In this document: in pieces, positions 25,285 to 55,200 of the stretch
Numbering within the stretch: the stretch's first letter is position 1
How the letters are laid out: every line of letters begins with the position of its first letter
Assembly: GCA_016748015.1 (NCBI GenBank)
Contig: JAAOMT010000058.1
Coordinates: 1-64,000 of the forward strand
DNA from: Geosiphon pyriformis uo1
Taxonomy: Eukaryota > Fungi > Glomeromycota
Length of the DNA: 64,000 nucleotides
Direction of reading: 5' to 3'
The notes under the pieces: generated by a model
What the model was told of the DNA's origin: nothing
The model's input: the letters and a program-made list of their open reading frames with translations, nothing else
Database searches by the model: none
Made by a program: the position numbers and the translations under genes

Positions 25285-25862
25285 TTGTAGCAATTATTAG
25301 AGTATTATAAAAGAAGATTAAAACTCCTTTGGAAAGTATTTTGGTACCTTTCCTATCTACCCTCCTTATCAAATTTCCAAGTCTACACCCGGCGTTTTCT
25401 ATTTAAACTGAAGCTTGAACAGTCAATATAATTATTATAAATTTGATGTAAATCGTGGTTTCTTTGAACTTTTCAAGTGGGCAGAATTCAAGGTACCAAA
25501 GATAGTATGATTCGTCCTTTAGAGAGATATCCTTAATTCTACTCAGAGAATAAGAATCTTATAGGTTTAGGAATTACCATTATCAAATTCTCACATATAA
25601 CCAATAAGATGAAATTCAGGCAATGATACTTCTTTAATCGAAATAAATGAAAACTTGACCTTTCAACTTAAGATCCAGACTTATCTAAAGGCATTAACAA
25701 ATTAATCCTGTGTTATTTTCCGTGGGTACTGGGGATGTTAAAGCTGTTAAATAAAAAAGAATTGTAGGAAATTTTGTTAGATAACATCGATTATGATAAT
25801 CACATAGTAGTCAGATGATTAAATATATATGGAGGGACATTATATATGTTTTCTCTTCACTA

Positions 25863-27709
25863 ATGTCTTCCTTTCAAAAACGAATACCAAAGACCTTTTT
25901 AACTGATTACGGAGCGTCAGCAATCAATTCCAAGACTCCACCGGGGATTAGGCCATCTTCGTATAATGGGCAACCTCTAATCTCAACTGGTGTACTCTCT
26001 TTTGATGATATCCTTTTTCTTTCACTTTCTCACTTCAAAGATCTCCGGGTCAAATTCTATTATTTTTAGTATTAATTTACACCATCCAACGATATTAGTT
26101 CAATGCATTCATCGAAAATCAAATACCATTTTCTGTGGGCTCTGATTTTTAAATACATATTTTAGGTGGTGGCATTCCAATAGGTTCAGTTTTATTGATT
26201 GCCGAGGATCGAAACACAAGTTACGCGAAATTGTTGATGAAGTATTTTATAGCACAGGGTTTTATACACGGTAATAAGATTTTGGTAACTAGTGGGGATG
26301 ATGATCCAAAAAATCTGGTAAAAGGATGTATGTGGATAAGTGACAGAGAGGAACGAGGCTCGGAGGATGATAAATTGAAGGGACATGGCAAAAAGGAGAA
26401 AAAACCACAGGATGGGGAGGAAGATGATGACTGTTCTAATGATGATGAAGAGGAGGGAAATTCTGAAAAAATGAAGATAGCTTGGCGTTATAAAGGAATG
26501 AAAAAACTTGGCAGTCATGTAGGCGTTGGTTTGACGTTAAATAAAGGTATACTCAAATTAGTCAAGTTTCTATTTATGATCATCAAAATGGAAATTCTAT
26601 AAATCTTCAAACCCTTTTTAGCATCGACTCTTCCATCAATATCACCTCTTCTAACTGAGTCGCCAAAACAAAATCAATTATCCTTTTGTAATACGTTTGA
26701 TCTGACAAAACGTATACCAGATGCTGTCCTGGATTCAGCCTCCTTGTGGCCTGTTGATGTTTCAAAATTGAGCCTATATGATAATCTTGATAGAATAAAT
26801 GAAAATGAAGGAAGAAACGTTTATGATCATATTTTGAGCGAGATCAGGAACGCTATTAGTGAGAATAGTCAAATGGTGTCTCAAAACGTGTTACGAGTTG
26901 CAATACACTCCATCGCGTCTCCAATGTGGCCTAATGCATCTGTGGAAGTAAGTTTTTTAATCATTCAAATAATTTCCCATGTATTATTATCTACTTAATC
27001 TATGAATTTCCACTTTTTCTATCTCAATTCAGGAATTATTCAAATTCTTTCACGCTCTACGAGGCATTCTGCGATCTTCCAATGGAACAGCTGTAGTAAC
27101 AATACCAGCCTATTTATATGCTTCTCATAATTCTGGATTATCAGACCTTCATTCTTCACCATTGATTAGGCGCGTCTCTCATATGTGTGACGCGTTGGTT
27201 GGTGTAGAGTCATTTGCTGGTATATATCAAGTCTGTCATTCAAATGCTGCGCAATCTTTAAATACGTCTAACCTACTTTTTGATAACCCTTTCTTATATA
27301 AGGGTCACCCAAAACATGTAACACTCTGTACTCGGCTCATTACAACGGTTTATTTCACGTATATAAACTTCCAACTTTGAATTCTCTTCTCGCGCCTGCG
27401 ACTAAACTATCGATACTTTCAAATGGTGGAGGAAATCAACTGGGTTTCAAATTACGGAGAAAAAAGTTTTCGATTGAAACATTTCATTTACCACCCGAAG
27501 GTGGTGTAGGTGAGAGAAGAGTTGGGGGTAGTAGTGAAGTAGAAAATGCACATGAAAATTTAAAAAAGCCCAATGTTACCGAGAAAAACGATGATGTTTC
27601 GACCTTTTTCCCAAAGAAATTTGGACCACGCACTGGTGGTTTTAACATTAAATCGGCGAGGCTGCACCATGGGAAAATGGGCACTGCCGAGGAAACTTTA
27701 GAGTTTTGA
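25863..27709 (+). CDS. ELP4: Elongator subunit Elp4, multi-exon
   Basis: PGIRPSSYNGQPLISTGVLSFDDILGGGIPIGS, YAKLLMKYFIAQG, KMKIAWRY, FCNTFDLTKR, LGFKLRRKKFSIETFHLPP, ends LEF*. Confidence 0.92.
26008..26156 (+). other. U12-type AT-AC intron 1 of ELP4
   Basis: Donor ATATCCTTTT, acceptor AAATAC. Removal restores SFDDILGGG; no GT donor is available at this junction. Confidence 0.85.
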
Positions 27710-28001
27710 TCAGTTTTTATTGAATGGGTTTAATAGGTTCAAGTTAATTGATCACTTTTACTAAAACTTTTATGCCTATATGTTGAGTCAAGTTTAAAAT
27801 GCTGTTCTGGCTTCTAATTTTAATCGATTGTTGATGTATTGTGATCCATTGTAATAAAAGCGTCTATGAATCCCAAGAGAATTGCATGTGCTTGATCACA
27901 TTGCTGGGAAGATCGATAAGTGGTCTTGAGTTCCGGTAACCCCTTACAAACATTCTTTAGGCCGGCCATAACTCTTTCTCTATTCCAATTTGATCGCCAT
28001 T

Positions 28002-29854
28002 TCATATGAGTGCACCAAATCTAAAAAGATGTTGTGGAAGATGCAGGAGTCGGACGCGTAGAAAACACAAAACCCAAAACAATTGCGGTCAGTACTAATG
28101 CTACAGTGATTCCAAATCCCAAAGCCATACCACTACCACCACCTTCACCCTCATTATAACTACTATGCTTATGTCTACGAGTATTTCGTTTTTCTTTACT
28201 ACGAGGTTTTTGTGATGATGATGATGATGATGGTTTGGAATATCGCCGAGAAACCTCAGCAGAAGATGAAGATGTTGACGATGAAGAATTAGCACTAGAA
28301 CTATAAGGAGTAGTGAAGAATGCGTACCCGAACACGCTCTTAATTGGATTCCAGTAATAGTTTTGCCAGTTTCGACGAACAACTTCTTCCTCGCCTACTG
28401 GTACTCCTTCTTGGGTAATGTGAACACGCGTAAAGTCACTTGCTTGATCAAAGGTCAGAATGACATTTGAAAAGTGTTCTGGCATGAATATTCGAGGATG
28501 AAGAAAGTGTGGCGGTGAACATTTTTGGAAATGTTTGCTGATCAGCTATGTCTGGATATGATTGAATTTACCTTCGGGCCACGTCTTCAAACGCCAAGTT
28601 TGTGCGATTCTTTGATTCGGGATCTAGAAGAATATTGTAACAACCATTCAGCTTTGAGGCGCACTTATGGAATCGTTTTTTTTTTTAATCAAAACATACT
28701 ATTTACCAGTTCTGTGAATATCCCAGTAATATTCCCACCAAACAAACTATATGCTCCACCCACATGACGAGCCAATTCAGGTTTTGCCCTTGTCCAAATT
28801 GCTACACGTTCGGGATTGAGGTATGCTTCATAAATTTGATCAGCTGACGTTTGGAATTCTATCGTCTCGGTAAGTTTTATTGTATTCAATGACTTTTTGC
28901 CCAGAGATCGACCTGAATCTGCCTTTTCAGAGATCTTAATCGGGGATTCAACCGTAGAGTGGGATGGTGTTACAAGCTGTGTGGGATTTGAAGTAGAAAC
29001 TTCGGATGGCTTAATGTATACATCTTTGCTATGATCTACAAAAAGAAGATGTTGTATAAGAAATGCCGAAAGCAACCTGAAGAGATAAACAGCTTACTGT
29101 CAATAAGGTCTTTAGAGAAGTTCCCCAATCTTTCTCGTAAAAGAGGAACTAAATCTTTCCTCACTAAATCTTCGATAGGTTCTGTACGGCTATTTTCTTC
29201 TTCAACAGTAATATCAAACTAGGAAGAAGTATCATATAAAATCGAAAATCCAATTCATCACTGCCAAAATTATCAGTTTTGATCAATCCACATACCACAA
29301 TATCGCTTGGCTCAGTATCGTGGGCAAATTCAGGTATATGAATTGTGCCCTTGACCTCAGTACCATCCGATGCGTTGCCTGAGAAATCACAAGATTGAGT
29401 CAATTCGTCAAATTTGAAACGTTTAATAACAATGAAATTTAATAACAACCTTTTCAAACTTACCAGACCATTTTAACGTCAATTGAACGTCAAAAATAGT
29501 AATAAGCTTTCCTTTTCGATTGCTCAAATCCACATCGCCTGTACAGGTTTCAAGCTCATTGGTTTTAACTTTAATGCCTTCATGTTCTACGACAAGGTCT
29601 TTTAAATTTTTGTTTAAATAATCTTTCGCCCAGTTAATACAGTTCTTGGTCGTCCTGAAGGGGGGTTTCAATTAATTAGAGCGTTTTATCTCAAAATCTA
29701 GAAATAAATCAACTTGATCAAGAACACCATACCAATGCCTGTTCCAATAAGCGATTCAGAAAGACAAGTCAGAAGCAATTTCGGAATATCAAAGATATCA
29801 AATACAAAAAACTGAAAAAACATGCCAATTATTGACGTTTTTCCAACTACTCAT
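28002..29854 (-). CDS. AHA1: Hsp90 ATPase activator Aha1, multi-exon (fully spliced form ends SVFGFGALI*)
   Basis: MSSWKNVNNWHWTTKNCINWA (NxNNWHW motif), SNRKGKLITIFDV, FSKDLIDHSKDV, AHSA1 domain GGAYSLFGGNITG...NWQNYYWNPIKSVFG. Confidence 0.93.
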
Positions 29855-34174: not shown

Positions 34175-35023
34175 TGTTACTCATAAAAAGAAAACAAATA
34201 TAAGAAAATAATAAACCAATAAGTGAATAGTATTTAGCACATGAGCACATTGCTCAGCAATGTGGAGCAATGTCAAAAAAACATGACACATTGTTCAGCA
34301 ATGTGGAGCAATGTCAGAAATTAGAACACATTGCTCAAAAAATCATAGCACATTGCTCGAAAATGTAAGCGATTTCATAGAACATCAATTATGTATATAT
34401 AGTGGTAACATTAGAAGTAGAAAAGACAGAATCTTTTTAGTTAAAGACCTCTTAGTTTAGATTTCATCTAGACAACTTTTCAAATCACAATAAATAACTA
34501 TTTGCTATCTAAGAAACTCACTTCTACTATCAACACTTCATGTTAATAGTAATTGATACTTAATAATACTGGAACAATAGCTTTTGATCATGGCTATTAA
34601 TAGGATACTAACTTGCAAATCACTTTGGCTTATTTCTTACATTTTTTTAATTTTTTTTATTTCTTTTCTTTGATTTTTGTTGTATACTAATTGATTAAAA
34701 AATTAAAAGTGCTGAGTTATTGACATCATGAATAACCTGGTAAAAAACCCAGAAATAAGAATAGAATTATATATATATTATTGGATAGCTTACCAGAAAA
34801 GCATGACTGCCAGAATAAATCTGGTGACCAAGCTAAGAAAGAAATTGGGAAACAACTTACAAAAAAACCATAAATAATCTCAACAAAGAATCTCTGTCCA
34901 TTATACAAAAGACTTATCAATCAAAATCTTCAGATCATATTCATCATCAAATGCAAATAGCTTTTGAGCACCAAGTTATGAGTTTGTTATTTGACTTGAG
35001 ACTTCAAGTAATTACTTGTAATA
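34175..35023 (+). repeat. 5' LTR of element A
   Basis: Direct repeat of 43420-44286; starts TGTTAC; followed by the PBS. Confidence 0.92.
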
Positions 35024-38000
35024 TTTGGTGCTTTCTGTGAGATATAATCTTACAGAGAACTGGCACCAACAACCATCATCTAAAAGTGGCAGAATCAGAA
35101 ATCATAGGAGCAAACCATTTAGGATTTGCTAAAGCCTTGTTTCAGCAGTACAGCCAACAATTAGGACTAAACAACAACCATTATTCAACAGAATCTGCTT
35201 TCAACTTCTATGTCAATGATAAAATCACTGACTGCTTAAGAAGAACAGTTAACATTGAAGCAGCAAGAGAAAACTTTTACACAGAATTATTCTAACACAC
35301 CAACTTATTAAGGAACTATAGTTTTGCACCAATAATCAGAGAAATCAACTAAACTATTAAAAGATACACCCAACAACAATTCCCTATCACCTATGCAGAC
35401 AAAGGCAAAAGAAGGTTACAAACACCAGTGATAATGCCTAAAAGAATATAACTACCAATCTGGAAGAAACAAAGAATTGAATTTCTACCATATCTATCAT
35501 ATCATCACACACCTGGAAGCACCATCAATATTACATTAGCAGGCACGTCCACATTAAATGCAACATCAACATTTGGATGATTTTCATTCCAAAGTAAACA
35601 AAAGAAAGCAGAGTTATTAGGACCATACGGCAAATATTTTGAGAGATTTAAATCACAATTACCAATGCCATCAGAGTTCCAGTCACTACCACTTCAACCA
35701 GACTTCAGAACAGCAAGTCCATGGAAAATCACTGAATCAAAAGGAGAACAAGAAGAGGAAGAAAAAGAAGAATCCGAGGATCAAGAATTTACTTACCAAA
35801 ACCCAATTACTGAAAACCTGGAATTTGAAATTCTGAATCTTTAAACTTAGCAACACTTAAATCCAGAAAATCTGGAAAGTAAAACTCCAAATATTCAGAC
35901 ACTACCAACTTAGAATAATCAAAACTCCAATCTAACTAACCAATCAAACTTACCTTTGGTAATCGTCATCAATCAACCACCAATTAATCCAATAGCCAAA
36001 CCCATATAACAACCACTTCAACAGCCACCACAACAACCCAACTTAAACCCAATGGCTTAAGCACCAATCGCAAAACTCAACAATTTTACTGGTGAAAAGA
36101 ATAACACTCAAGTATGGCTAAATGACATGGAAAAGACTATCACAGCCAATAGATGGAATAATGTCCAAGCAATGCAAGCCATTCCCTATTTTTTCAAGGA
36201 TATCACCAATTCATAGTATTAGAACTTGATTAATAAACCACAAGACTTCAATGCCTTTAAAGTGGAATTCTTAAGATACTTTAGCAACAATAACAGTATT
36301 AATTACCTAGTCAATACATTCACCACCATGAAGCAAGGAGAAACTAAAGCAGTCACTACTTACCTAGGATGCTTTCATAGAAACCTATGCCAAATTCAAG
36401 CAATTAATGCCAACTATTTCACAGCACCACAGATCTTCAATCAGTTTATCCATGGCTTGTGCAGTAGCATCTTGCAACATGTATGTCCATTGCATTCAGG
36501 CATCCTTTAAGACACAGTCATATGTGCCAGAGATTTCAAATCAGCTGAGTCTGAGACCAACCATGCCCAAGCCATTAATCTAGTGATGAATAGATCATCT
36601 GAATTGGATTCCAAATTGGAGAAATTTAGTAAAACAATTAATCAAAAGATAGAAAGATACTTAGCTAATAACAATCAGGCAATTTATTAACTACCACAAT
36701 GACACAATAATCAAGAAAACTCTAATCATTCACAGAACCAACCACATTCATCTTCATTGACCAATCAACAGTGGCAACAGGAAATGTGTATCTGTCACTA
36801 TTGTGGTAAACAAGGACATATCCAAATTGACTGCCACTAGTGTGTAAATAACCAATGATCAAGAAATCAATATTGAAACTCTGATTGCCAGTTCTCAACT
36901 CTGAATTATCAATCAAATTCAGCACAATATCAAACCACTTACTTGCCAATGATGCAGCAACCAATCTATTAACCACCAGTATATTAACCACCAGTTTATC
37001 AACTACAGCCACCAACAATTTATCCATTACAGCCACAAGTAATTTATCAGCCACAGCCTCAAGTAATCTATCAGTCTCAACAATCAATCCAAACACTACC
37101 CCAAAACTCCACTATTATGACATCAGGAAACCCAAGACACCGAATTATACAAAACTGGAGATTGGCAATGGTTGTTCACCAACTGATCTTCAACTCCTCT
37201 TACCAACCAATGGAATCATGTTCTCGGAGTTCAAGAACTGGATATGCCCAAAACCCAAATTCTCAGAACTATTTAAGTCTTCTGGTGACCTCAGCAGATG
37301 CCCAACCCAACCACCCAAAAAACAACTAACAACAAACACTTACCAACAACATTCCACCTGCTACGATCACTGAGAATGAATCTTTGGACACCATTTTTCC
37401 ATTTGAACTCAAAGAACCATCAGTTACATGATTGTTCAGTAGAGCCGTACTCAAAAAGAAACCCATCACTGCCATGTATACTGATGCAAAAGTTGATGGC
37501 CATTCTATCAAACTGATTCTAGATAGTGGATCAGCTGACAGTATCATCACAAAACAATTTATGGATCAATTAGGTCACTGAGTTGATCACGCTGTCAGTG
37601 CCAGAATTATTACCACTGATGGAGTGACTAAAACACTCATTGGAGAAATTGATAACTTCTCCATTGAAGTTAATGGCATCATTGTACTAATCAAGATACT
37701 AGTAATGAAAGCCACCCAATACCAAGCTCTAGTTGGTAATGACTGGTTGTCCAAAACAAATGCCACTCTTGATTGAAACACACAAGAACTCCAACTTAGT
37801 CAAAATGGTTGACACACATGTATACCAGCCACATGTGGCCATTTCAAGACCACCAACACACCAGCACCACTTATTAATTTTGAGAAAGAGAAGTTGAAGC
37901 CAACATGGGAGGCATATCAAGTCTTGTGGACCAATGAGGACCACAATGAGCTGCCACCAATACTCTCATGAAATGACAATGTAAAGAGAAAGCAAAGAGA

Positions 38001-39079
38001 AAAACCTACCTGGGAGACTGACAATCTGATCTGAACCAACAACGATGAAAATGAGCTGACACCAAACTGGAAATGGGAAGAAGAAAATGATAAGAGAAAG
38101 AGAAAAGGGAAGAAAGAAGAAACAATACCCACTAACACCACTTCTTCTAACTCCTACATCTACACTACACAACAATGATCTACTTATTGCTGACTGAAAC
38201 TAGAGTGCATCAATTGCAGCAAGAAATTGTTATCAATGGGCATATACTGTGGCAATGATGAAGAATACCAGATAGCAACCAAGTTCTATTGCCACCCATG
38301 CTTCATTGAATGCTTTGGAAGACCAAAACAAGTGAAAAAATGAGATAATGAGCCATGCTTGGCTTGTGAAAAAACTCTTTTCAACAAAGAAATATGGAAT
38401 AACATTTCTGGGAGAGGAAGAACATACAATAAGTTGTGTTAATACATGATTCTTATAAGCAACTGGATAAGGAAAAGGACACCATTAGAAGCCACCTGGA
38501 GAAGAACTGTGAGATGTCTGGATAGTTGTCCACACAACGATGATGAGATCTAGTGAATGGCACTCGCCAAAATTGAAGGGGCAATGCCAAAAGAAATTAA
38601 GACCATCAAGAATAATCCTTCAGAACCTATAGAATTCGATTGGGATCTAGAACCAGTCATAAACCTATTGGACTCAAAGCAATTCCACAAACACTACCAA
38701 GAATTAGTGCCCACCAGAGAAGAGCAAGAACAGTGGTTAGAGCAACTAAACACTTGACTATGTGATCACTGTTTGATTCCATGTGACTTTCAATATTGTA
38801 ATGAATGTGATTTTATTTACAATCTACCACCACACATGATCTACATGATTTCAGAGGAAATCAAACCAATTAGCAGCTATGCATTAGAATTGGAATCAAT
38901 TTTTGATCCCAATTCCAACTTTGACAACGATGATGACAAAAACAACAGTTTTAGCTCTGTTCAATATGGCAATAAAAATAACTCAGATTCAAACTCCAAT
39001 TCAGACTATGAACAATATATTGCACTCCCTGATCTCACAAAGGAACAGGAACTTAAATGGTTTAGTAATAACGATGAAG

Positions 39080-39460
39080 GTATCATGCCAGAATGCACAC
39101 ATGATACTGATACCAGGTTTGATTTAAGGTATTTAGAGAAAGATACCATCAAATTGGAACCACATTTGCACACCTACATCAATTTGAAAATAGCATTGGA
39201 AATACCAGCAACAACCATAGTTCAACTAGCTTCCAGAAGTAGTTTAGCAAAAAGAGAGATTACTATAAGAGGAGAAATAATTGATGCCAGGTATGTAGAA
39301 AATATCATGGCAATACTACAAAATAACTCAGAAAAAGCCTATATCATAGAGCCAAATGAAAAAATAGTACAGGTAATATTCCTGCCTCTGGTTAGAGTAG
39401 CTCAGTTGGAAAAAGGAAAGAGTTAGAAATAACAGCCAGAGAGATACAAGAATTTGGATT
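39080..39460 (+). pseudogene. dUTPase domain in pol of element A
   Basis: HDTDTRFDL (DAGFDL), QLASRSSLAK, GEIIDARYVENI (GIIDAGYxG), EKIVQVIF, and decayed motif V (REIQEFGFM). Confidence 0.85.
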
Positions 39461-42400
39461 CATGAGTAAAATAGATGTACCAGTCAATATGGCAGAGAAA
39501 AAAATTGTTGGCCAAGAAGAAATTATTTCAACTGGTCAAGCAATTTCCATTCCATCATATGATCAGTACATAGTAGCAGTAGAAAGGAAAATGAAAGATC
39601 AAGCACAAATTTTTGAAGCAGAAGTTGGACTGATCAATCTACACATATCAGCCAAAGACCACAACCATATCAAAATTTCCATCTACAACAACACAGAAAA
39701 TGTTGTAGAGATACCAGAAGGAACCAGTCTCAGATATTTGACTACTGAAATTGAGAATCAACCACCAAGTACTATTTCAGATTTTCCACAACTGTGTGAA
39801 TATATAGATATTACATTACAAACAATCTATAGACGAAATGAATGTTATTTGTCCAACCAGAACAATTGGAACAGATAAACATAAAAAACTTAGACCCACT
39901 TCAATGTATGCAGCTCAAGATGTTGCTCAACAATTTCAATGACATCTTTGCCAGTGAAAATGAATTTGGTAGAACAGACATCATCCAACACTAAATAAAA
40001 ACTAGAGATATGATGCCAATTAAACAAAGAGCATATAGAGTACCACCAGCCAGCCATAAGATTATTTGTTAAGAGATTAATCGAATGCTTGACAATGGGC
40101 TAATCCAGCCATCAATAAGTCTATGATTATCACCAGTAGTACTCATCTGTAAGAAGAATGGAAAGATCTGATTTTGTGTAGACTACAGGAAACTTAATGG
40201 TATAACTCATGGAGACAGCTATTCAACTCCATGGATACAAAAATTATTCAATGCTTTCGGCAGAAATAAATGGTTTTCAATATTAGACTTGAATAGTAGT
40301 TACTGACAAGTAGCCATAAACTCAGCTAACAAAGAGAAAATGGCATTTACCACAAGAGAGAGAAATTTTGAGTTTGAAGTCATGCCATTCGACTTAACTA
40401 ATGCTTCAGCAACCTTCCAATGACTAATAAAAATTGTGTATACTGGTTTATTGTGGAAATCAGTGGTAATCTAATTAGATAATACCAATGTATTCTCAAG
40501 AACATTCGATGATTATTTCCATTATCTCCAACAAGTATTCAAAAGACTACGACAAACAGGATTAAAGCTAAATACTACCAAGTGCTTCTTTGGCAAAACA
40601 GAATTGAAATTTTTGGGACACATAGTTAGCAAAAACGACATCAAGACAGACTCAGACAAGATAGAGATAGTAAAAAACTTTCCAGTACCAACCAATGTAA
40701 CCAAACTAAAATCATTTTTAGGATTTGCAAGCTATTATCATCACTTCATCAAAGATTTTTCTAAAATAGCTTAGCCACTCAACCATCTACAAACCAAGAA
40801 CGTGAAATATGAATGGACAGAAATGCAACAAGAAGCTTTTGACATTTTAAGAAGAAAGCTCATTTAAGCACCAGTGTTAATCTATCCAGACTACAGCAAA
40901 CCATTTATTATTACTACTGATGCATTAGGTCAAGCATTGGGAGCAGTACTATCTCAGAGGGAACTGGATGGAAGAGAACATCCAGTGGCATTTGCCAGCC
41001 AAGGTTTAATGCCAGCCAAAAAGAACTATAGAACACCAGCATTGGAATACTTAGCAATCTATTGGGTAGTTATAAAATAGAAAAAATACTTGAGCCAGAA
41101 ATTTGAAGTATTTATGGATCACAAAGGATTGACTTCAATTCAGAAACAAGAGTTTGTTAATGATCGACATGCAAGATGGAAACTAGTATTATCACCATAT
41201 ACATTTACGGTACACTACAAAAAAAGAAAAGACAATGGAAATGTGGATGGTTTGTATAAATGAGACAAATCTGAACATTTCAAACCAAAATATATTAAAA
41301 CCCAAACCAATCCAATGAAAAATATAATAAAAGATAAACACACAAAAATACTAACAAATCTAACACTATATAAATACTCAACAGTTCAAAGAGAAATTAT
41401 CTCAAAAGGAATGAAATAGTATAAAACAACAATCAAAATATTTTATCAACCATCAAAATATACTTTACTGGAAGAATAGACAAAATTCAGATCAACCAAC
41501 TAGAGTAATTACAGAGCCAGAGAGAAAAACAATACTGTTTAACATGTATTCAGATCCAATAGCAGGACATTTTCATAAAGAAGCAACAATAGAAAGAACC
41601 AAAAAAAGATACTATTGGCCATCAATGTATCCAGACATCATCTAATATGTTCAAAATTGTGATGCTTGTCAAAGAAGAGAAGTAACAAAACCCAGTGAAC
41701 CATTAAGACCAATCAAAATGGGACAACCATTTGATCACATTGGAATTGACTTAGTCAGACCATTAACAATCACAAGCAGAGACAACAGATATATTGCAGT
41801 AGCATGGATTATCTCACAAAATGGCCAGAAGCAAAAGCCATTCAAAGAGTAGATGCAGAATCTGTTGCTGAATTTGTTTATCAAGATTTGATCTGCTGAC
41901 ATGGATGTCCAAAAAAACTATTATCAGATCAAAGAACTCACTTTGTGAATAAAACATTGGCAGAATTAAGTCAAAGATTTGGGATAAAAAGACCATTATC
42001 ATCACTATACTATCCACAAACAAATGGGTTAGTTGAAAGGTTTAACAGAACATTGTGTGAAACCATTGCCAAAATCAGCCAAGAAAACCAGAACAAATGG
42101 GACTTGATTATACCATCAGTATTATTTGCTTATCGAACAATAAAACAAGACACTACACAAGCAACACCATTTGAATTAGTATATGGTAGAACAGCAACAT
42201 TACCAGTTGAGATAGAAGTTAAGACATATCCAACAGAACCAATAACAAAAGAGAATTTCCAAAAAACATTGTTAAAAAGAACATATGACTTAATGGAGAC
42301 ATTAGAAAACACATGATAAAAAGCAGCTGATAACATTCAAAAGTTACAAAAAAAACAAAAAAAAAGACATGATAACCAATTACCAAATAAACCAGTTGAA

Positions 42401-42769
42401 TTCAAGATTAGAGACAAAGTACTTTTATATCATACCAAAGTAGAAAAACAATAGAGTGGAAAATTCGACTCCAAATGGAATGAACCATTTCACATAAAAG
42501 AAATTCTTGGAAATGGAGCTTATAAATTAAGATGGGACAACAAAATATTAGCCAAAGCAGCACATGATGATTGACTGAAACTATATTACCAGATAGCATT
42601 ATCATCCACCAATAACATTCCACAATTGGGAGTACAACAAATACTAGTTCAACCAAATGAGATTCCATGAGATATGGAACCAATCATAATCATTGGACCA
42701 AATACATAAAATCAAACAATAAAAGAGTATATAAAGACACAGTACACGTGACAAAAACAACCAAAAAAA

Positions 42770-43405
42770 ATGGAAATACCAGATCATATTCACATCATAG
42801 CTCAACAATTATTTCAGGCCTTAAGTCAATAATCTTTAGACATAGAAGTTATTGTTAACAACCAAACAATTTGCTATTAAAACACCAAAAGAAAGACAAA
42901 GAATACACCATATCAGTGGTTACCAAAGAATGATAAAAACTGGTCAGATAACATAATAGAAAAAGTAAAAAACACTTTTGGAAAAATACTTATTATGGCA
43001 CCAACAGAAGAACTTACAAAAGAGAATTGGAAGCAATAGACAGAACAACTTCCAATATCATACTGTTACTACCAGTTGGATCAAAAGTTGAATATTCAAG
43101 AGTTGTATATCAACAAATTCAAGAGAATATTTAACCAAAACATAATACAGCAAATTGAAGAATTTATTGAAAAGAAAACAAACTCAACACTACATGTGAG
43201 AACAATTTACTGACTGTACAACATATTTCAGAACTATCTAAAAATACTGTTACACTCTGACATAGAAACCATAATCATTAACCAATGGGGAAGAATAAAC
43301 AATGTACAAGTAGAAGAAGTGAAAAATAAAGTCGAACAGACAATACTAGAAAAAGAAGTATTAAAACTAATTCAGAATAAAGATTTCGACAGAGCTCAAT
43401 ATTAA
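42770..43405 (+). pseudogene. ORF3 of element A (211 codons, unknown function), between integrase and PPT
   Basis: Own ATG after the integrase stop; one frame with four stops explainable by transitions; homologous to ORF3 of element C. Confidence 0.75.
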
Positions 43406-43419
43406 AAAAGAGGAGATAA

Positions 43420-44286
43420 TATTACTCATAAAAAAAAACAGATATAAGAAAATAATAGACCAATAAGTAAATAGTATTTAGCACATGAGCACATTGCTCA
43501 GCAATGTAAAGCAATGTCAAAAAAACATGACACATTGCTCAGCAATATGGAGCAATGTTAGAAATTAAGACACATTGCTCAGCAATGTAAGCATTGCTCA
43601 AGAAATCATAACATATTGCTCGAGAATGTGAGCAATCTTATAGAACATCAATTATGTATATATAGCAGTAATATTAAAAGTAAAAAAGACAGAATCTTTT
43701 TAGTTAGAGACCTCTCAGTTTAGATTTCATCTAGACAACTTTTCAAACCACAATAAATAACTATTTGCTATTTAAGAAACTTACTTCTACTATCAATACT
43801 TCATGTTGATAGTAATTGATACTTAACCACACTGGAACAATAGCTCTTGATTATGGCTATTAACAGAATACTAACTTGCAAATCACCTTGGCTTATTTCT
43901 TACATTTCTTTAATTTTCTTTATTTCTTTTCTTTGATTTTTGTTGTATACTAATTAATTAAAAGATTAAAAGTGCTAAGTTATTGATGTCATGGATAGCC
44001 TAGTAAAAGACCCAAAAATAAGGATAGAATTATATATATATTATCAGATAGCTTACCAAAAGAGCATGACTGTCAGAATAAATCTGGTCACCAAGCTGAG
44101 AAAGAAATTAGGAAACAACTTACAAGAAAACCATAAATAACCTTAACAAAGAATCTCTGTCCATTATACAAAGAACTCATCAATCAAAACCTTCAGATCA
44201 TATTCATCATTAAATGCAAATAACTTTCAAGCACCAAGTTACGAGTTTGTTATTTGACTTAAGATTCTAAGTAATCACTTATAACA
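43420..44286 (+). repeat. 3' LTR of element A
   Basis: Follows the PPT; ends ATAACA then TSD CCGT. Confidence 0.92.
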
Positions 44287-46671: not shown

Positions 46672-47754
46672 TGTTATCAGTAAACTTAGTGTGTATAGGA
46701 AATGGTAATGTTTGGTGCTCTCAATTATTGATAATGCATCTTCTACATAATTCTGTTGGCTTAGTCTTGATTATCAGTCTCTGAAGGTCTATTTCTGAAT
46801 GTGAATTTTACCTATTGAGTTTTTTGGTTATAAGGCACAGAGTTTGTCTTTCATCGATTGCAACATTTTTCATAAATGTGAGCTTTCTTCTCCGAGCTAA
46901 TGAGCGCAGTTGTTAGGGTCTGGCATTGTCTTTTCACCCTTCTGGTAAGCTAACAAGATAATGTTAATATCTAAAACTTAGGAAGAGCTTCCCTCTTTTA
47001 CCAGGCTATTACAAAGTCTATTCCCAGACAGTTGATTTTATTATGTTGCTGCTCCACAAAAATAAGACAGAAAAAGAAAGAAAAAGAAAAAGAAAAGAAA
47101 AGAAAAGAGAGAAAAGATAAATTAATATCGTCAATTGCCATGATCAAGAGTGATTGGTCTAAATCATTAATAGGTTTAAGGCAGTTATGCTAAGAGCATC
47201 TGTTCTAGAATGGAAGTACGAAACAAGGGTTAATTCACGTAAATTCCACGAAGTTCAAGAACATGAATTCATGATTCTGATTTCTTTAATAATTGGTTTA
47301 TTTCAGGAGATGAAATAGAAAAGATAATAAAGGATGAAGGAGTATGGATATTTTAATTCTGGTCTAGAGGTTCGTATCTATCTGTCTGTCTTTTCTCATT
47401 TCTACAACTACTTGCTTTTATACATTTTTTTGGTTTTACAGGATTGCTTTCAATTGTCTCGCTATCACTAACTATTGCTTTGTTGTTTCTGTTATTGCTT
47501 CGTTTTTCTACATTATCACTAGTTATCCTATGTTATAACACGTTATCTGATGTTATTACATGTTATTCTGTATTATCCTGTATTATAACATGTTATCCTA
47601 TGTTATTGTGCGCTATTTTGTGTTATCCTGCATTATAACACATTATCCTATGTTATAATGCATTATCCAACATTATTGCACGTTATTCTGTGTTATGTCA
47701 CATTTTGGTCATGTTTCTTTATAACTTTGGATCAGTTTTTCTACTCGGGTAACA
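46672..47754 (-). repeat. 3' LTR of element C
   Basis: Direct repeat of 55813-56895; adjacent to the PPT. Confidence 0.92.
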
Positions 47755-47774
47755 TTATCTCTCTCTTTTTAAAA

Positions 47775-48503
47775 TTAAGCTCCTGCGAAACCATATGTAT
47801 CTGTTATCATGACTTCATTTGTGTAATGTTTAATTGTTGTCTTGAGTATTGCCTTTTGTAGATCTTTGAACTGTTGATTGGTTATTTGTCCTATGTTGTT
47901 AATCATTATGGTTTTTATAGATCTGTTCAGTAGTATGTTTGGGCAATGTTGAAAGGCAGCGTATAGTTGGTATGCTGCTTTGTAATGTAGGGTCAGGTTG
48001 TTTTTCCCTATGAATTTTTCTACTTGTTGTATTGCTTCTTTGTTGAACGTTTTCTGGCTGAGATCTTTGTATGGTGTTTTCAAGTCAAGCTGTTTTCCAA
48101 TTTTGTAGAACTAATAAGCTGGAGGAAGTCTTTCTTTCCATTCCTGGGTGTTGTCAGGTGTCTACTCTCCTGTTTCAGGGAGTTTGATCCCATGAGCTAA
48201 AGCTTCTTTTATTTCTTTGAGCTCGGGGACCAAGTATCTTTTTTTGTAACTTTTTTCTCATTTTTTGCCTCCTTCTTTTTCACCTCCCACCCGAAGGCAA
48301 TTTTTCTTCCAATATTGCCTTTTGGGTGGTGGGTAGGGGAGAGAATGTTTAGTTCTAATTGAACTCTTATCCTCCCTTCTCCTGCTTTTATCTTTGTACC
48401 ATATCTCTTTTTTATCAATTGTTATTTCTATTTGAGATGTCGATTTTTGAATTGTTTCAAATAATTGTTTAAATAATTTTAAAATTTGATCTGAAAGGTC
48501 CAT
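47775..48503 (-). pseudogene. ORF3 of element C (~242 codons, unknown function)
   Basis: MDLSDQILKLFKQLFETI...EWKERLPPAY*FYKIGKQL...AAYQLYAAFQ...GFAGA*. One frame; aligns by eye with ORF3 of A. Confidence 0.75.
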
Positions 48504-51500
48504 GTTGAAATTTCTATCATTTCTTGCTGCTTTTCGGATGCTATATATATTTGAATTCCCCAATTTAATTTGCTGCCTGTTGTCTATGTTTTAATGACAA
48601 TAATTGATTCTAGATCTTATAGTATATCTTTTGGTCTGATTAATAAAATTTGTGTTCCTAGTTGAGGTACTAATAACAATAATTCTTGTTTTACATTATA
48701 AATTTTTAACCAATTTCCATGCGCTATTTTCTTTAAAATTCTGTCTTCCAATCATAATTTGTAAGCTCCATTTCCTAATGCTTCATATATGTGGAATGGA
48801 TCATTCCACTTTGGGTCGAACTTTCCACTCCACTGTTTCTCAACTTTTGTATGATGTAACAGTACTTGGTCTCCAATCTTGAATTCCATTGGTTGTTTTG
48901 ATAGGTGTTTATCATGTCTTTTTTTTTGTTGTTCTTGAGCATGACTAATATTGTCAGCTGCTGTTCTTTGATTGTTTTCCAACATTTCTATTAGCTGGTA
49001 TGTTCTTTGGTATAAGGTAGCCTCAAAATTTTCTTTATTGATTGTTTCTGTTGGGTATAATGGTATCACTCGTTCAATCAGTAACGTAGCTTTTCTTCCA
49101 TAGACTAGTTCAAACAGTGTGAACTGAGTCATATTTTGTTTCAATGTTTGGTATGCAAAGAGTACAGAAGGTATGAATAAGTCCCATTCTTGTCTGTTTT
49201 TATGACTTATTTTTGCTAGTGCTTCACACAGTGTTCTGTTAAATTGTTCTACCAGTCTGTTCATTTGTGGGTAATATGGTGACAATAAGGGTCTCTTTAT
49301 TCTAAACTGTTGGCTTAGTTCAGTCAATGTATTATTAACAAAGTGTGTTCCCTGATCAGATAATAATTCTTTCGGACATCCATGTCAGCAAATTAGGTTT
49401 TGATGCACAAATTTGGTGACTGTTTTGGCATCAGCCACTTGGATTGCTCTGGTTTTTGGCCATTTTGTAAGATAGTCTATAGCTATAGTGATATAGCGAT
49501 TTCCTTGGAATGTAATTGAAAGAAGTCCAACCAAATTGATCCCGATTCTATTAAATGGATTTCCAACTGGAATGGGTCGAAGTAGTTCTGTTGATCTTGC
49601 TCCTCCTCTTCACTGGCATGTGTCACAATTGAGCACGTATTCAAAAATGTCTTTGTATATTATTGACCAATAGTATAAGTTTAGTGTTCTTTCGAGAGTA
49701 GCATCTTTGTTAAAGTGTCCTGCAGTCAGATCTGAGTGCACGCTATATAGTATAGTTTCTCTTTCACTGTCCTTGATTAGTCATTGTGAGTTGGGGTGGT
49801 TTCGGCATTCTTGTCAATATAGTTGGTTGTCTTGAATAAAATAATTTTGGGCTTGTTTTCATATGGTACTCTGTTCCTGTTGAGATAATATCTCCTTGAA
49901 ACGTAGTGTCGATAGGTACTGATGTAGTTGTTGATAAGTGAGTGTGTCCATGGGTCTGGGATTAGGTTTGTGGTATTCTCAACAAACTGTCAACATTGGT
50001 GTTCTTGGATCCTTCCTTGTAATAGACTTTGAGTGGGAATTGTTGCAGATAAGTACTCCATCTTGCATATTTTCTTTCTAGTTGTGGATTGTTGAATAAC
50101 CAAATAAGTCCTTTGTGGTCAGTATATAAGTCAAATGGTTGACTGAGGTAATGTTTCCAAGTCTGTATGGCCCAATAAATGGCGAGACATTCCAGATCTG
50201 TTGTGCTGTAATTTTTTTCTGCTGGGCTAGTGCTGCAACTAGTATAGACAACTGGGTGTTCTCTATTGTCTGGTCCTATCTGTGATAAGACTGCTCCTAA
50301 AGTATTTTTCGAGGCATCCGTGGCAACAATGAACCGTTTAGTGAAATCTGGGTAAATCAGGATTGGGGATGTGATCAATCGTTGCTTGAAATAGTCAAAT
50401 GCTTTCTGTTGATCTTTCTTCCACAAGTATGGTATGTATTTGGACAACAATTGATGGAGTGGTTTTGTGATGTTTGAGAAACCTTTGACAAATTGACGAT
50501 AATATTCTGCCAATTCTAGAAATCCTCATAATTTTCTGAGGTTGATTGGGGCTAGAAAATCCTTGACTTTTTGTACTTTATCTGAATCGGGTTTAACTTC
50601 ATCTTTGCCAATTACATGTCCTAGGAATTTTAACTCGGTTTTTCCAAAGAAGCACTTTTCAGGATTGAGTTTCAATCCGGCATTACAAAGGTGTTCGAAG
50701 ACTTGTTGCAGGTAAAGCAGATAGTCTTTGAATGTTTCGGAGAACACGTTTGTGTCATCTAGGTAGACTACTACTGATTTCCAAAGGATTCTTTTGTATA
50801 CTACATCCATCAGGCGTTGAAATGTGGCAGGAGCATTACAAAGTCCAAAAGACATTATGTTAAACTCAAAGTTTTCATCTTGAATGGTAAATGCTGTTTT
50901 TTTTTTGTCTTTGGGGTCCATTTCAACTTGCCAATAACCACTTGCTAAATCTAATGACAAGAACCATTTCTTTTTCCCTAGATTGTCCAGAATTTCCTGA
51001 ATGAGAGGAGTGAGATACCTATCTCCTTGCGTGACACTATTTAGTTTTTAATAATCTACACAAAATTGCATTTTTCCATTTTTCTTGGTGACCAAGACTA
51101 CTGGTGAGGACCAAGGGCTTAACAATTCTTTGATTAGGCCATTATTAAGCATCTGTTGCACTTCTTGCTTAATTAAGTTATTGCCAGATGGGAGTACATG
51201 GTAAGTTTGTTGCTTAATTGGTCAAGCATTTCCTGTATCAATCTGATGCTTCACGATGTTAGTGCATCTGAACTCATTTTTACTGGCAAAGACATTGGCA
51301 TACTGATTCAGAAGGACTTTGAGTTGCATTTGTTATAAGGTACTTAAATTTCCTAAATTCAATTTATTGATCTCTTCTGGTGTGAACAAGTAACTTTCTT
51401 TTGGTAAATTCCATACTTGTGAGGTAATGTCACAGAATAAGAATAATTGTGCAAAATCTGGAATGGACTGGAGTTTTTCAGGATTCTGAATATCTGTGGA

Positions 51501-51779
51501 TATAGAACTAACGAGAGTCCCTTCGGGGATTTCAATGACATCTTCTGTTGGGTTGTGGATGGAGATTTTGAAGTGTTTATGGGCTTTGGCCAGTAGTTAT
51601 AGATTAGCAACATTGGCTAGGGAACAGATTTTGAGACTGGCTTTGAATAACAGGGCTTGATCTTGGATTTTTCGATTCACCTTGAGGATGTATTGTCGGT
51701 ATAGGAGAATAGAGATAACAGTATCGGTGTTGATAAATTCTATCTGGTCACTGTCTTTCTCTGTGAAACTAACTGGTAC

Positions 51780-52200
51780 ATTTCTTCTTCCACTTGATTC
51801 AAATCCATTGATTCCTTGGGCAGTGAGGCCTAACTCTTTTTGGGTTGTTACCAGAGTTAATTAGAGTATTTTGACTAGGGGTAGGAAGATAGCTTGGACA
51901 ATCTTTTCTTGTGATTCTATTTTGTAGGGTCTGTCTAAATTGTTCTGTAGCATCACAATGATGTTTCTCATGTAACTGGCATCGATGATTCCTCCTTTTA
52001 TGTCGATTCCTTTCTTGGCTAAACTAGATCAAGAGGCAACTTGTACCATTGTACTAACAAGAATTTCTAATGCTATCTTAAGATCTATTTTTATGAAGGA
52101 ATGTGAGGCTATAATGATAGGTGATTGTCTGGGGTATCATAGGTCAAAACCGGCATCGGTGTCATGCGCTTTTTCAGAGCAGATTCTTTCTTTGTTATCA
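51780..52200 (-). pseudogene. dUTPase domain in pol of element C
   Basis: KAHDTDAGFDL, QVAS*SSLAKKGIDIKGGIIDASYMRNI, EKIVQAIF, AQGINGFESSG. Confidence 0.88.
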
Positions 52201-55200
52201 CTGTACCATTTTAGTTCTAGTTCTTTGGATAAGTCAGGATATGTGAAATACTGTTTTGTTTTAGTATTCTCAGTTGGATCTTGAAATGACATGTCCTTGG
52301 TGATCAATATTTCTTCTTTGGGCTCAGGTAGTTCAGTGATTGGAAACAGTATTCTTGGAGGCAGATTAAACATGAGATCACATTCGTTACAGTACTAAAA
52401 GTGACAGAGGATCAAACAGTAATCGCACAGTTTGGTATTCAAATTGGCCAACCTTTGCTCCTGTTCTTCGTGAGTCAGGGCCAATTTCTGATATTAGTTC
52501 TGAAATGCATCTGGGTTATCTGTGAAGAAATTATCCTCGGGGTAGTCAGGTCCATTATATTCAGGTGTTCAAGGGTTGTCCTTGATTTCTCGTATTTCTT
52601 TGGGTGTGGTGCCTTCAGCCTTGGTGCTTGCCATTCTTCAGATTTTGTGGTCATTGTGTGGATAACTGTTTAGCCTGTTGAGTGCTTGTTTCCAAGCATC
52701 CTCAATGGGGGTTCCCTTTCGTATTTAATCATTGATTAATATGGTGTATTGACAAGCCTCATCGCATGTTTCTCCTCTGCCAGGCACATTATTCCAGAGT
52801 TCTTTATCTGGCAGGATTTTGCTACATGTAAGGCATGGCATGTTGTCCTACTTGCCTTGTCATTTTGGTCATCCAAATCTTTCCAGTAAACAAAGTTTGC
52901 AATAGTATTTGGTGGCAGTGGGCCATTCTTCGTTGTCCCCAATATATGCACCCATAGTAGATAGTTTTTTTCCACAATTGACACATATTAGTCTTGGGAG
53001 TTGGTAAAATAAGTTTCTTTGGTTTAAGGTTACGTATCCTAGTGATGACAATTGGGGTTCTTCTTCGGCTCTGCCTTTTCCTTTTTCTTCTTAGATTGGT
53101 AGTGGGGGTAGTTCAGTTCAATAATCATCTGCCCATGAAACCTGATAGGTCTCGATGGTTGGTGGCATTGATGTGTCTTCGAATTCAATAAGGGGTTCCT
53201 CAGTACGTTGGGTTTTAAAGTGTCCGCACATAGCTGGAACTTGGGCATGCTGTCCGTTGAACATGAGTTGAAGTTCTTGGGTGTTTCAGTCAAGAGTAGT
53301 GTTGGCTTTTGACAACCAGTTGTTTCTTACTAGAGCTTGATATTGAGTAGCTTCCATGACAAGTACTTTGGTAGGAATTTGGATTCCATTAATCTTGAAG
53401 GGAAAGTTGTCAATTTCTCCTATCAGGGTTTTTGTGTTTCCATCCACTGTAATGATCTGGGCAGTAGTGACATGGTCTACTTGGCGACCTAATTGGTCCA
53501 TGAGCTGCTTCGTGATTATGCTACTGGCTGATCTGCTATCCAGGATTAATTTAATGTCTATTCCTCCGACTCTGGCATTGGTGTATAGAGCCATTATTGG
53601 TTTATTCTAATTGATGGCTGCTCTACTAAAAAGGCTATGGGTGTTCAAATTATCAATGTCAAAAGGAAATATGGCAGCTAGGGTGGTGTCTTTGGTAATA
53701 GTGGCTGGTGGAATATTGCTTTTTGTTTGCTTGGAAGGTTGGGAGATTCGTTTTATATCCCCCCTTTCCACAGGTGTAGATTTATCAAAACCCTGGTCTT
53801 CCATAAGACTGAGATAAGAAGCTTGATTCAGGTATTCAGTTGGTGTTGGTTGAAATTGGGCAGGACCACAAGGGATTGGTCAAGACAGTCCACTGTTGGT
53901 TTGCACCTGATTGTTGTTGGGATTCCTCCATCCCTGATTATAGTCTATAGCTCGAAGTCTGGACAGACTGTAAGGAGAAGTTTGATAGTAAGGGATTGCT
54001 TGTGTCATTGGTGGTGGTTGATAATAATTCTGGGACTGTGGTTGAGTGTACGGAACTTGTTGTGTATATAAAGGTGGTTGATTCTGAGGTATAGAATATT
54101 GGGATATCATGTTTTACTGATATCTGGGTTGCTGGTATGGGTTTCCTTGATTTTGGTTCATGATCTTCTTTCTCTAGTCACGAGTGATGTGTTCAGGTTT
54201 CTAGCAGTAGTAATAGTTGTGGGGATCAGATCTCCAAGGTTGTTGCTATTGCTGACAGTTTTGTTGCTATGAGTATCTGCTGTTGTTGTTATTTTCTCTC
54301 CGTTGGGGTGGTTGGTAAGTTCTTGTAGTTCCGGCTAAGAATTTCTCAATTTTCTGAGTTAGTTTTTCACTCAATTGGGTTATCTTTGTGTCAATGTCAG
54401 AGATTCCATTAATGGCTAAATTAACAGCTTGGGTATGATTCATTTCTTGTTTTGCAGACTCAAAATCGCAAGCAAGAGTGATGGCGTCTTGTAAACTGGT
54501 CAGATGGCGGGGTTTTATGGATCTTAGAATACTACTCTGCAATCCTTTAATGAATTGATTAAGAACTTGCACCATGATGTAGTAGCCCCTTTCGATAGCT
54601 AATATTTAACGCAGGATTTGATTGAATTGTCCGAGATAAGTAGTTACTGCTTCATGATCTTTTTGTTTAATTATGTTGAATTGAATCTGCAATTAGATTA
54701 ACGTATTGGGGTCATAGAAGTATTGCAGAATGCAAGTTTAAACTTGGTAAAAGAGGTAAGCTTCTCTGCTAGGCTCTGGTATCACAAATTGGCAGTTCCA
54801 GTCAGAAAAAATGGCAGTGCCTGAATTGTGTGGTCGTCATTCCAACCGTTAGCAGTAATTGCTTTCTCGGCATCTGTGATCCAAGAATATGCATTATCTT
54901 CTTTACCAGAGAATTTTTCCAATTTAGCGATATCCTGGTAAGCCATGATCTGGTTAATAGGTAAGGTGTTACTGGTTATGTTTAAAGAGATTAATGTCCG
55001 TGTATTCAAGTGTTCTCTGGGTGCTAATGCTGGTTGCTTTTCTTTGTCACTTGAACCAATAGGTTGTAAGATAGTTGTTTTTTCTGTCAGGGGAGATGCT
55101 GATTCTACTAGGTTTTGTGCTGGTGGCTGTTCCCAAGTTAACGGGTTTCCTTCTGTTTGACTAGCTGCTGGGATAAGATTTCCAAACAGTGATCCATATT

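What the first reader, a model, noticed from the sequence alone, without database searches (positions are those of the whole stretch)
28002..28327. Last AHA1 intron is a hidden ORF encoding a membrane tail anchor: soluble vs membrane-bound Hsp90 co-chaperone by intron retention
Seen: after ...IKSVFG there is a donor GG|GTACGC (28327) and an acceptor TTTTTAG| (28021). Splicing gives the canonical short Aha1 end SVFGFGALI* (stop at 28002). The 307-nt intron is much longer and less AT-rich than most introns here (~60-110 nt) and has no in-frame stop until its last three bases, so the acceptor TAG is also the stop codon. Retention adds ~100 aa: a Ser-rich linker, a basic patch (KPRSKEKRNTRRHKH), a Gly hinge, a hydrophobic helix (MALGFGITVALVLTAIVLGFVF) and a short polar tail. 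Known: this is tail-anchored protein architecture, and Aha1 is normally soluble. Inference: a splicing switch that tethers an Hsp90 activator to ER, nuclear envelope, mitochondria or peroxisome. I cannot check whether it is already described.
Basis: partly seen in the sequence, partly recalled or inferred. Interest (0 to 1): 0.9.

Follow-up and report, generated by a model that had tools for sequence, protein, structure and literature searches.

The report
Fungal Aha1 intron encodes membrane anchor
The last intron of the gene for Aha1, the helper that switches on the Hsp90 chaperone, is kept translatable in many fungi and encodes a membrane anchor, so one gene can probably make both a soluble and a membrane-tethered form; the tethered form has not yet been seen directly.

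Summary
Observation confirmed. The last AHA1 intron (28327-28021, minus strand, 307 nt; organism almost certainly Geosiphon pyriformis) is open in frame. It encodes a Ser linker, a basic patch, a 22-residue hydrophobic helix and a short tail, and its acceptor TAG is the stop. The one RNA run shows only the spliced form (326 aa); no retained contig. But the same intron is open with the same architecture in all seven Glomeromycota checked at DNA level (163-325 nt, all 3n+1, TAG = stop), and in Jimgerdemannia, Piptocephalis, three Mortierella-like contigs and Aspergillus versicolor. Its 9 indels are all multiples of 3 (11 of 53 elsewhere), and the helix mostly shows purifying selection. The likely branch point lies inside the helix codons. 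One R. irregularis annotation lists both isoforms, and a metatranscriptome contig reads through the first donor. Best reading: an old, conserved minor tail-anchored Aha1 isoform (422 aa), probably at the ER or nuclear envelope, working like yeast PTC7 retention. It is patchy in Ascomycota and apparently absent in Rhizopus and S. pombe. I found no paper on it. No fully retained transcript, protein or localisation is shown.

The parts
28002..29854 (-). AHA1 gene (Hsp90 ATPase activator), 9 coding exons, single copy in the assembly; 326 aa spliced, 422 aa with the last intron retained
   Evidence: Pfam Aha1_N and AHSA1 on the exons; one match each in G000; junctions from an RNA contig; lengths; 97% identical to Geosiphon pyriformis KAG9305839.1 over the searched stretch
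28328..28478 (-). Penultimate exon, end of the AHSA1 domain (...YYWNPIKSVFG)
28021..28327 (-). Last intron, 307 nt, phase 2, GT..AG; open in frame for 101 codons (dual-use intron)
   Evidence: spliced in RNA; open frame; conserved as an open frame in relatives
28165..28209 (-). Basic patch KPRSKEKRNTRRHKH within the disordered Ser-rich linker
   Evidence: 6-9 K/R per 12 residues in all 17 non-ascomycete tails measured; linker disordered in the AF2 model of the R. irregularis orthologue
28063..28128 (-). Predicted transmembrane helix MALGFGITVALVLTAIVLGFVF
   Evidence: KD 2.5; helix 375-395 in the orthologue model, low pLDDT; pN<pS in most pair sets
28088..28094 (-). TACTGAC branch-point-like motif inside the V-L-T codons of the helix (GTA CTG AC), 68 nt before the acceptor
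   Evidence: GTA CTG AC in 9 of 10 VLT-bearing orthologues; no AG between it and the acceptor; use as branch point is inferred, not shown
28021..28023 (-). Acceptor TAG doubling as stop codon of the retained form
   Evidence: same arrangement in all 7 Glomeromycota loci
28002..28020 (-). Terminal coding exon of the soluble form (FGALI*)
   Evidence: matches the family end FG[FY]Gxxx*
27729..28001 (-). 3' UTR; poly(A) at 27729
   Evidence: loose poly-T end at 27729

Best explanation
AHA1 makes two products from its 3' end. SHOWN: splicing of the last intron gives the ordinary soluble Aha1 ending FGFGALI, the dominant mRNA. SHOWN BY COMPARISON: the intron is maintained as coding sequence for a disordered Ser/basic linker, one hydrophobic helix and a short polar tail. 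INFERRED: when the intron is kept, translation runs through and yields a tail-anchored Aha1 with both Hsp90-binding domains intact on the cytosolic side. No exon junction lies downstream, so the mRNA should escape junction-dependent decay. The protein would be inserted after translation (GET/EMC type), most likely into the ER or nuclear envelope (about 0.6; mitochondrial outer membrane about 0.25; other about 0.15), where it would stimulate Hsp90 on membrane-associated clients. The likely branch point sits inside the helix codons, 41-80 nt from the acceptor in Glomeromycota, which ties splicing signal and anchor together. The retained form is probably minor or condition-dependent. In lineages where the stop lies before the acceptor, intronic polyadenylation could give the same protein.
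For: Open frame with basic patch and C-terminal helix at the same phase-2 FG|GTA intron in Geosiphon (307 nt), Ambispora leptoticha (319), A. gerdemannii (325), Paraglomus brasilianum (265), Glomus cerebriforme (196), Rhizophagus irregularis (208) and Racocetra fulgida (163): all 3n+1 with TAG as stop. Also Jimgerdemannia (295), Piptocephalis (291), three unnamed Mortierella-like contigs (246-332) and A. versicolor (119). Indels in this intron: 9 of 9 multiples of 3, against 11 of 53 elsewhere in the same genes, p=8e-6. Helix window without the VLT codons: pS 0.35 vs pN 0.06 for one set of three disjoint pairs (p=8e-6); p=0.014 and 0.017 for two other sets. R. irregularis DAOM 197198w is named on both a 336-aa and a 399-aa protein with an identical 331-aa prefix; that annotation added isoforms with PASA from ESTs (PMC3886924). 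A JGI contig lacking two upstream introns reads about 87 nt into this intron before splicing from an inner donor, so the first donor is sometimes skipped (L019). Both domains fold before residue 330 in the AF2 model of the long form.
Against: No fully retained transcript was found. The Geosiphon run has one spliced contig at depth 619 and zero coverage in the intron, while a neighbouring gene assembled at depth 22 and a fragment at 13.5. Intron-less Aha1 contigs or ORFs L012, L013, P0009 and P0281 all end in the short form. One of four pair sets shows no significant pN<pS (p=0.16), and the linker evolves fast (whole-tail omega 0.2-0.9). Part of the helix conservation (VLT) is explained by the branch-point motif. 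The intron is rich in TCA/AGT/GGT repeats, which slip in threes anyway. Many NCBI models with the tail may be ab initio predictions and are not expression evidence. Only 18 of 66 Pezizomycotina-like read-throughs have a helix, in a search biased towards them. No protein or localisation data.
Confidence: 0.78

Rival explanations
1. The long product is translated, but the hydrophobic tail is a degradation signal or a non-functional sink. Retention would then tune the amount of soluble Aha1, with the tail routing the product to GET/BAG6-like triage and the proteasome.
For: Translated introns give hydrophobic C-tails that are captured and degraded in human cells (bioRxiv 10.1101/2022.07.20.500724). 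The retained mRNA is invisible in the one run. The linker is poorly conserved.
Against: A mere degron would not need a conserved order of basic patch, Gly hinge, full-length helix and short +1/+2 tail from Glomeromycota to Zoopagomycota, nor near-invariant helix residues with many synonymous changes in the Mortierella-like trio (1 nonsynonymous vs 7 synonymous changes).
Confidence: 0.1
2. The intron is constitutively spliced, and the open frame and helix are by-products of splicing signals (branch point plus T-rich tract read as hydrophobic codons) and trinucleotide repeats.
For: Only spliced RNA was seen. VLT equals TACTGAC. In A. versicolor the helix overlaps the branch point, the pyrimidine tract and the last exon in another frame. 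Other frames also score hydrophobic.
Against: No shuffle in 20,000 gave both an open frame and a helix. Twelve loci of 119-332 nt are stop-free up to the helix. Indels come only in threes. T is enriched at codon position 2 of the helix (14 of 23, with no A). In Mortierella-like, Jimgerdemannia and Piptocephalis loci the helix ends 35-130 nt before the acceptor, away from the pyrimidine tract. This rival is more plausible for the Aspergillus tail alone.
Confidence: 0.07
3. The tail is functional, but the anchored form arises mainly by routes other than retention (intronic polyadenylation, alternative 3' sites or a separate last exon), or arose independently in several lineages.
For: The stop lies upstream of the acceptor in Mortierella-like, Jimgerdemannia and Piptocephalis loci. 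In the chytrid Blyttiomyces the intron has a stop at its first codon, and a similar basic-patch-plus-helix tail is annotated on a downstream exon behind the canonical one. Aspergillus tails lack the basic patch.
Against: In this organism and all Glomeromycota checked the stop is the acceptor TAG itself, so the whole intron must be kept. The [VL]LTA[IVF]xLG helix core aligns across Glomeromycota, the Mortierella-like contigs and, loosely, Jimgerdemannia.
Confidence: 0.05

Closest known systems
Saccharomyces cerevisiae PTC7 intron retention (Juneau et al. 2009, as reviewed in PMC7491326)
   Same: A retained, translatable intron adds a transmembrane helix and changes localisation (nuclear membrane for the unspliced form); conserved across related yeasts.
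   Different: PTC7 is a phosphatase, its spliced form is mitochondrial, and the event arose 114-304 MYA within Saccharomycotina; from my knowledge its intron is near the 5' end. Here it is the last intron, the product is tail-anchored, the acceptor is the stop codon, the protein is an Hsp90 co-chaperone and the spread covers several early-diverging fungal lineages.
FES1 alternative splicing in budding yeasts (PMC7491326)
   Same: A co-chaperone gene yields two differently localised isoforms by splicing.
   Different: Fes1 serves Hsp70, and the isoforms are nuclear versus cytoplasmic, both soluble; no membrane anchor.
Canonical Aha1/AHSA1 (PF09229 + PF08327)
   Same: Both domains are present, and the spliced form has the family's FG[FY]Gxxx end.
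   Different: Known as a soluble protein (own knowledge; cytoplasmic FolAha1-GFP in PMC10152141). No anchored isoform turned up in six Aha1-directed or related literature searches.
Membrane-anchored Hsp90 co-chaperones such as FKBP8 (ER-anchored, PMC13470449); Tom70 (own knowledge)
   Same: They hold Hsp90 activity at an organelle surface with the chaperone-binding part in the cytosol.
   Different: They are dedicated TPR-domain docking proteins with a constitutive anchor. The long Aha1 would be an ATPase activator whose anchor is optional.

Membership tests
Aha1/AHSA1 co-chaperones | N-terminal Aha1_N domain plus C-terminal AHSA1 domain | tested here: met
   Pfam on exons and on full-length P0001 and P0299
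Aha1/AHSA1 co-chaperones | Stimulates Hsp90 ATPase | not testable with these tools
   inferred from homology only
Tail-anchored membrane proteins | Single hydrophobic helix of about 17-22 residues within about 30 residues of the C-terminus | tested here: met
   22-residue helix followed by 13 residues; helix 375-395 of 399 in the orthologue model, low confidence
Tail-anchored membrane proteins | No N-terminal signal peptide or other membrane segment | tested here: inconclusive
   N-terminus is the canonical polar MSSWKNVNNWHW and the model shows two soluble domains; no dedicated predictor was run
Tail-anchored membrane proteins | Post-translational membrane insertion | not testable with these tools
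   needs fractionation or imaging
PTC7-type functional intron retention | Intron is really spliced in part of the mRNA | tested here: met
PTC7-type functional intron retention | Intron is really retained in mature mRNA | tested here: inconclusive
   Not seen in the one Geosiphon run, contigs only; indirect support from the two-isoform R. irregularis annotation and partial read-through in L019
PTC7-type functional intron retention | Intron is translatable and conserved as coding sequence with a membrane helix | tested here: met
PTC7-type functional intron retention | Isoforms localise differently and have distinct functions | not testable with these tools
   no experiment available

The most novel reading that the evidence does not exclude
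An undescribed alternative-splicing event, as old as the split of Mucoromycota and Zoopagomycota or older (a chytrid has a similar tail on a separate exon), gives fungi a tail-anchored Hsp90 ATPase activator at the ER or nuclear envelope, with the intron's branch point embedded in the anchor's codons and the isoform ratio set by conditions.
Probability: 0.55. Interest if true: 0.85.

Novelty: new variant of a known kind. Interest (0 to 1): 0.76.

Why it matters
Functional alternative splicing with deep conservation is rare in fungi; the known old cases are a short list (SKI7/HBS1, MDH, GND, SRC1/HEH2, PRP5; PMC7491326). This would add one that touches the core Hsp90 machine. Aha1 is treated as a soluble protein, so a membrane-bound form would give a direct, testable way to steer Hsp90 activity to membrane clients. 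Hsp90 co-chaperones including Aha1 are reported to regulate fungal responses to azoles (title cited in PMC13753843), and the tail is present in Aspergillus, where it can be tested genetically. It also explains why databases list Aha1 in one genus, even one species, with two different C-termini. C-terminal GFP tags placed at the short end would miss the long form.

Tried and rejected
1. Direct RNA proof of retention: only one run was offered (X1, Logan contigs) and it showed the spliced form only. I screened 74 tail-bearing database proteins for non-NCBI ORFs spanning upstream exon junctions; none clearly did, so they are genomic read-throughs or gene models.
2. A broad 26-sequence alignment was too diverse for the metagenome scan; the narrower one gave 7 loci.
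3. The long AG-free zone after the branch point is weak evidence, since ordinary introns here also have zones of 26-78 nt.
4. The NCBI Geosiphon model KAG9305839.1 (507 aa) reads into the intron, then splices out of the helix into another frame; I treat it as a gene-model error, since the RNA contig contradicts it.
5. A second AHA1 copy that could carry one form alone: none found.
6. Pfam hits on the tail are noise (E>=0.077).
7. Literature searches found no report of this isoform; the library lacks most subscription papers.
8. The search of earlier findings returned nothing.
9. Basidiomycota were not assessed; my motif would probably miss their different C-terminus.
Exons were joined once inside a local script only to count lengths and stops.

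Full report
What is in the window. The minus strand from 29854 to 28002 holds a single-copy AHA1 gene: Pfam finds Aha1_N and AHSA1 on its exons and each exon searched has one match in the 128-Mb assembly. The best database hit is Geosiphon pyriformis KAG9305839.1 at 97% over the searched stretch, so the window is almost certainly that glomeromycotan fungus. The last intron runs from GG|GTACGC at 28327 to TTTTTAG| at 28021, 307 nt. Spliced, the protein ends SVFGFGALI at 326 aa. Retained, the frame stays open for 101 codons and ends at the acceptor TAG, 422 aa. The other seven introns are 62-93 nt. In 20,000 dinucleotide shuffles none had both an open frame and a C-terminal hydrophobic helix; each alone occurred in under 1%.

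RNA from this organism. One public run was available, as Logan contigs. One 1314-nt contig at depth 619 covers the whole mRNA, removes all introns including this one exactly, and ends in poly(A) at 27729. The bin depths over the intron equal the exon fraction exactly (176.8 = 618.9 x 44/154; 446.1 = 618.9 x 111/154), so no contig lies in the intron. The neighbouring gene assembled at depth 22 and a fragment at 13.5. If nothing was simplified away, retention in that sample is below roughly 2-4% (inference). The tool warns that contigs drop rare variants and that a repeat at 28203-28241 was skipped, so absence is not proven. The spliced form is shown; the retained form is not.

Comparative evidence. 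The orthologous intron sits at the same phase-2 FG|GTA position in every genomic locus fetched. In Ambispora leptoticha (319 nt), A. gerdemannii (325), Paraglomus brasilianum (265), Glomus cerebriforme (196), Rhizophagus irregularis (208) and Racocetra fulgida (163) it is open, has length 3n+1, uses the acceptor TAG as stop, and splices to [FY]GAL[IL]*. Gene models of Gigaspora, Acaulospora and Diversispora carry the same tail. Outside Glomeromycota the intron is open with linker, basic patch, Gly hinge, helix and short tail in Jimgerdemannia flammicorona (Endogonales), Piptocephalis tieghemiana (Zoopagomycota) and three unnamed metagenomic contigs that I take to be Mortierella-like (a guess); there the stop lies 35-130 nt before the acceptor. 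In Aspergillus versicolor the 119-nt intron is read through into the last exon in another frame and gives a helix without the basic patch. Among Pezizomycotina-like read-through ORFs only 18 of 66 have a helix, in a search biased towards them. Rhizopus and S. pombe ORFs called on long Logan contigs run straight into the short end, so they appear to lack the intron. The chytrid Blyttiomyces has a stop at the first intron codon, but its model places a similar tail on an exon downstream of the canonical one.

Selection. In two pairwise alignments of whole genes, all 9 indels in this intron are multiples of 3, against 11 of 53 elsewhere (p=8e-6). The trinucleotide repeats in the linker favour such slips, which softens this number. 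In an 18-codon window around the helix, leaving out VLT, three disjoint pairs give pS 0.35 and pN 0.06 (p=8e-6); other pair sets give p=0.014, 0.017 and 0.16. The linker changes fast but keeps its composition: 6-9 basic residues in a 12-residue window in all 17 non-ascomycete tails. T is concentrated at codon position 2 of the helix. Together these say the frame is coding.

The VLT of the helix is GTA CTG AC in 9 of 10 orthologues that have it, although synonymous sites in the upstream exon are near saturation between these lineages (pS 0.53-0.79) and GTA and CTG are minority codons. TACTGAC is a fungal branch-point consensus (own knowledge). In Geosiphon it is the only such motif in the 3' part of the intron, 68 nt from the acceptor. 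The anchor and the splicing signal therefore probably share sequence. Its use as branch point is inferred.

Indirect transcript evidence. The name R. irregularis DAOM 197198w is attached to both a 336-aa and a 399-aa Aha1 with the same first 331 residues. That genome's annotation used PASA on ESTs to add alternatively spliced isoforms (PMC3886924). This suggests, but does not prove, EST support for both. JGI contig L019, close to Rhizophagus, lacks two upstream introns of 80 and 67 nt, reads about 87 nt into the last intron and then skips 122 nt from an inner GTGAG donor to the usual acceptor. So the first donor is sometimes passed over, here giving a third, anchor-less form; the contig's flanks look chimeric.

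Mechanism. Shown: spliced soluble form. Shown by comparison: coding constraint on the intron. Inferred: a retained mRNA with no downstream junction and a 3' UTR of about 290 nt, translated into Aha1 with both domains intact, a disordered linker and a terminal helix, as in the AF2 model of the R. irregularis long form (domains at pLDDT 83-97 to residue 330, linker below 50, helix 375-395). The weaker helix and KK end of the Mortierella-like tails would also fit mitochondria. Peroxisomes usually need a more basic tail (own knowledge). The basic patch could be a nuclear import signal or a lipid-binding segment; untested. Rivals are a degron or sink role, a splicing-signal by-product, and other routes to the same tail.

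Comparison with known systems. It works like yeast PTC7, where a retained intron adds a membrane helix and moves the protein to the nuclear membrane, and it resembles FES1 in being a co-chaperone with two localisations (PMC7491326). It is an Aha1 by domain content. It meets the sequence definition of a tail-anchored protein, but insertion is untested. Membership in functional intron retention is incomplete because the retained mRNA was not observed. Literature searches found no description of an anchored Aha1 isoform, within a library that lacks most subscription journals.

Verdict. A real, conserved, apparently undescribed dual-use intron; new variant of a known kind; functional tail-anchored isoform about 0.78; interest 0.76. 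Exons were joined once in a local script only to count lengths.

Noticed in passing
window 29733-29825 (-): AHA1 intron 1 is a GC-AG intron (GCATGT..ACAG, 87 nt) followed by a 6-nt micro-exon GCATTG (29738-29733) that completes NNWHW. The RNA contig joint matches its inclusion. The micro-exon is also present in Glomus, Rhizophagus and Ambispora DNA, and several NCBI models miss it.
   Followed up: partly
window 25815-27724 (+) and 27729: The convergent neighbour is ELP4 (PAXNEB). Its RNA contig ends at 27724 and the AHA1 poly(A) site is at 27729, so the two 3' ends nearly touch.
   Followed up: partly
window 26307 and 25959-25984: The RNA contig of ELP4 has one extra A behind 26307 relative to the assembly, and a second contig shows three substitutions; strain difference or assembly error.
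   Followed up: no
L019:481-685: Third splice form in a Rhizophagus-like transcript contig: an inner donor in the last intron gives a C-terminus with the basic patch but no anchor. A Racocetra persica model (P0158) has a similar junction.
   Followed up: partly
L004:3446-3881 (Blyttiomyces): The tail-anchor segment lies on a separate exon downstream of the canonical last exon, reached by a second acceptor in the gene model: same architecture, different splicing route.
   Followed up: partly
P0040, P0163-P0168 (Chytriomyces): Tandem Aha1-like models, some ending directly in a hydrophobic tail; possibly duplicates that split the soluble and anchored roles.
   Followed up: no
P0334-P0338 (unnamed Eurotiomycete-like cluster): Some members have an early stop after the donor while the helix-coding stretch is conserved further down the intron, hinting at an alternative acceptor instead of retention.
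   Followed up: no
window 35000-44000 and 47000-56000: Two long blocks with strong AT skew of opposite sign (about +0.2 to +0.35 and -0.15 to -0.35), and ORFs of equal length 217 aa on opposite strands (38773-39426 +, 54782-55435 -); may be inverted copies of a degenerate repeat or retroelement.
   Followed up: no
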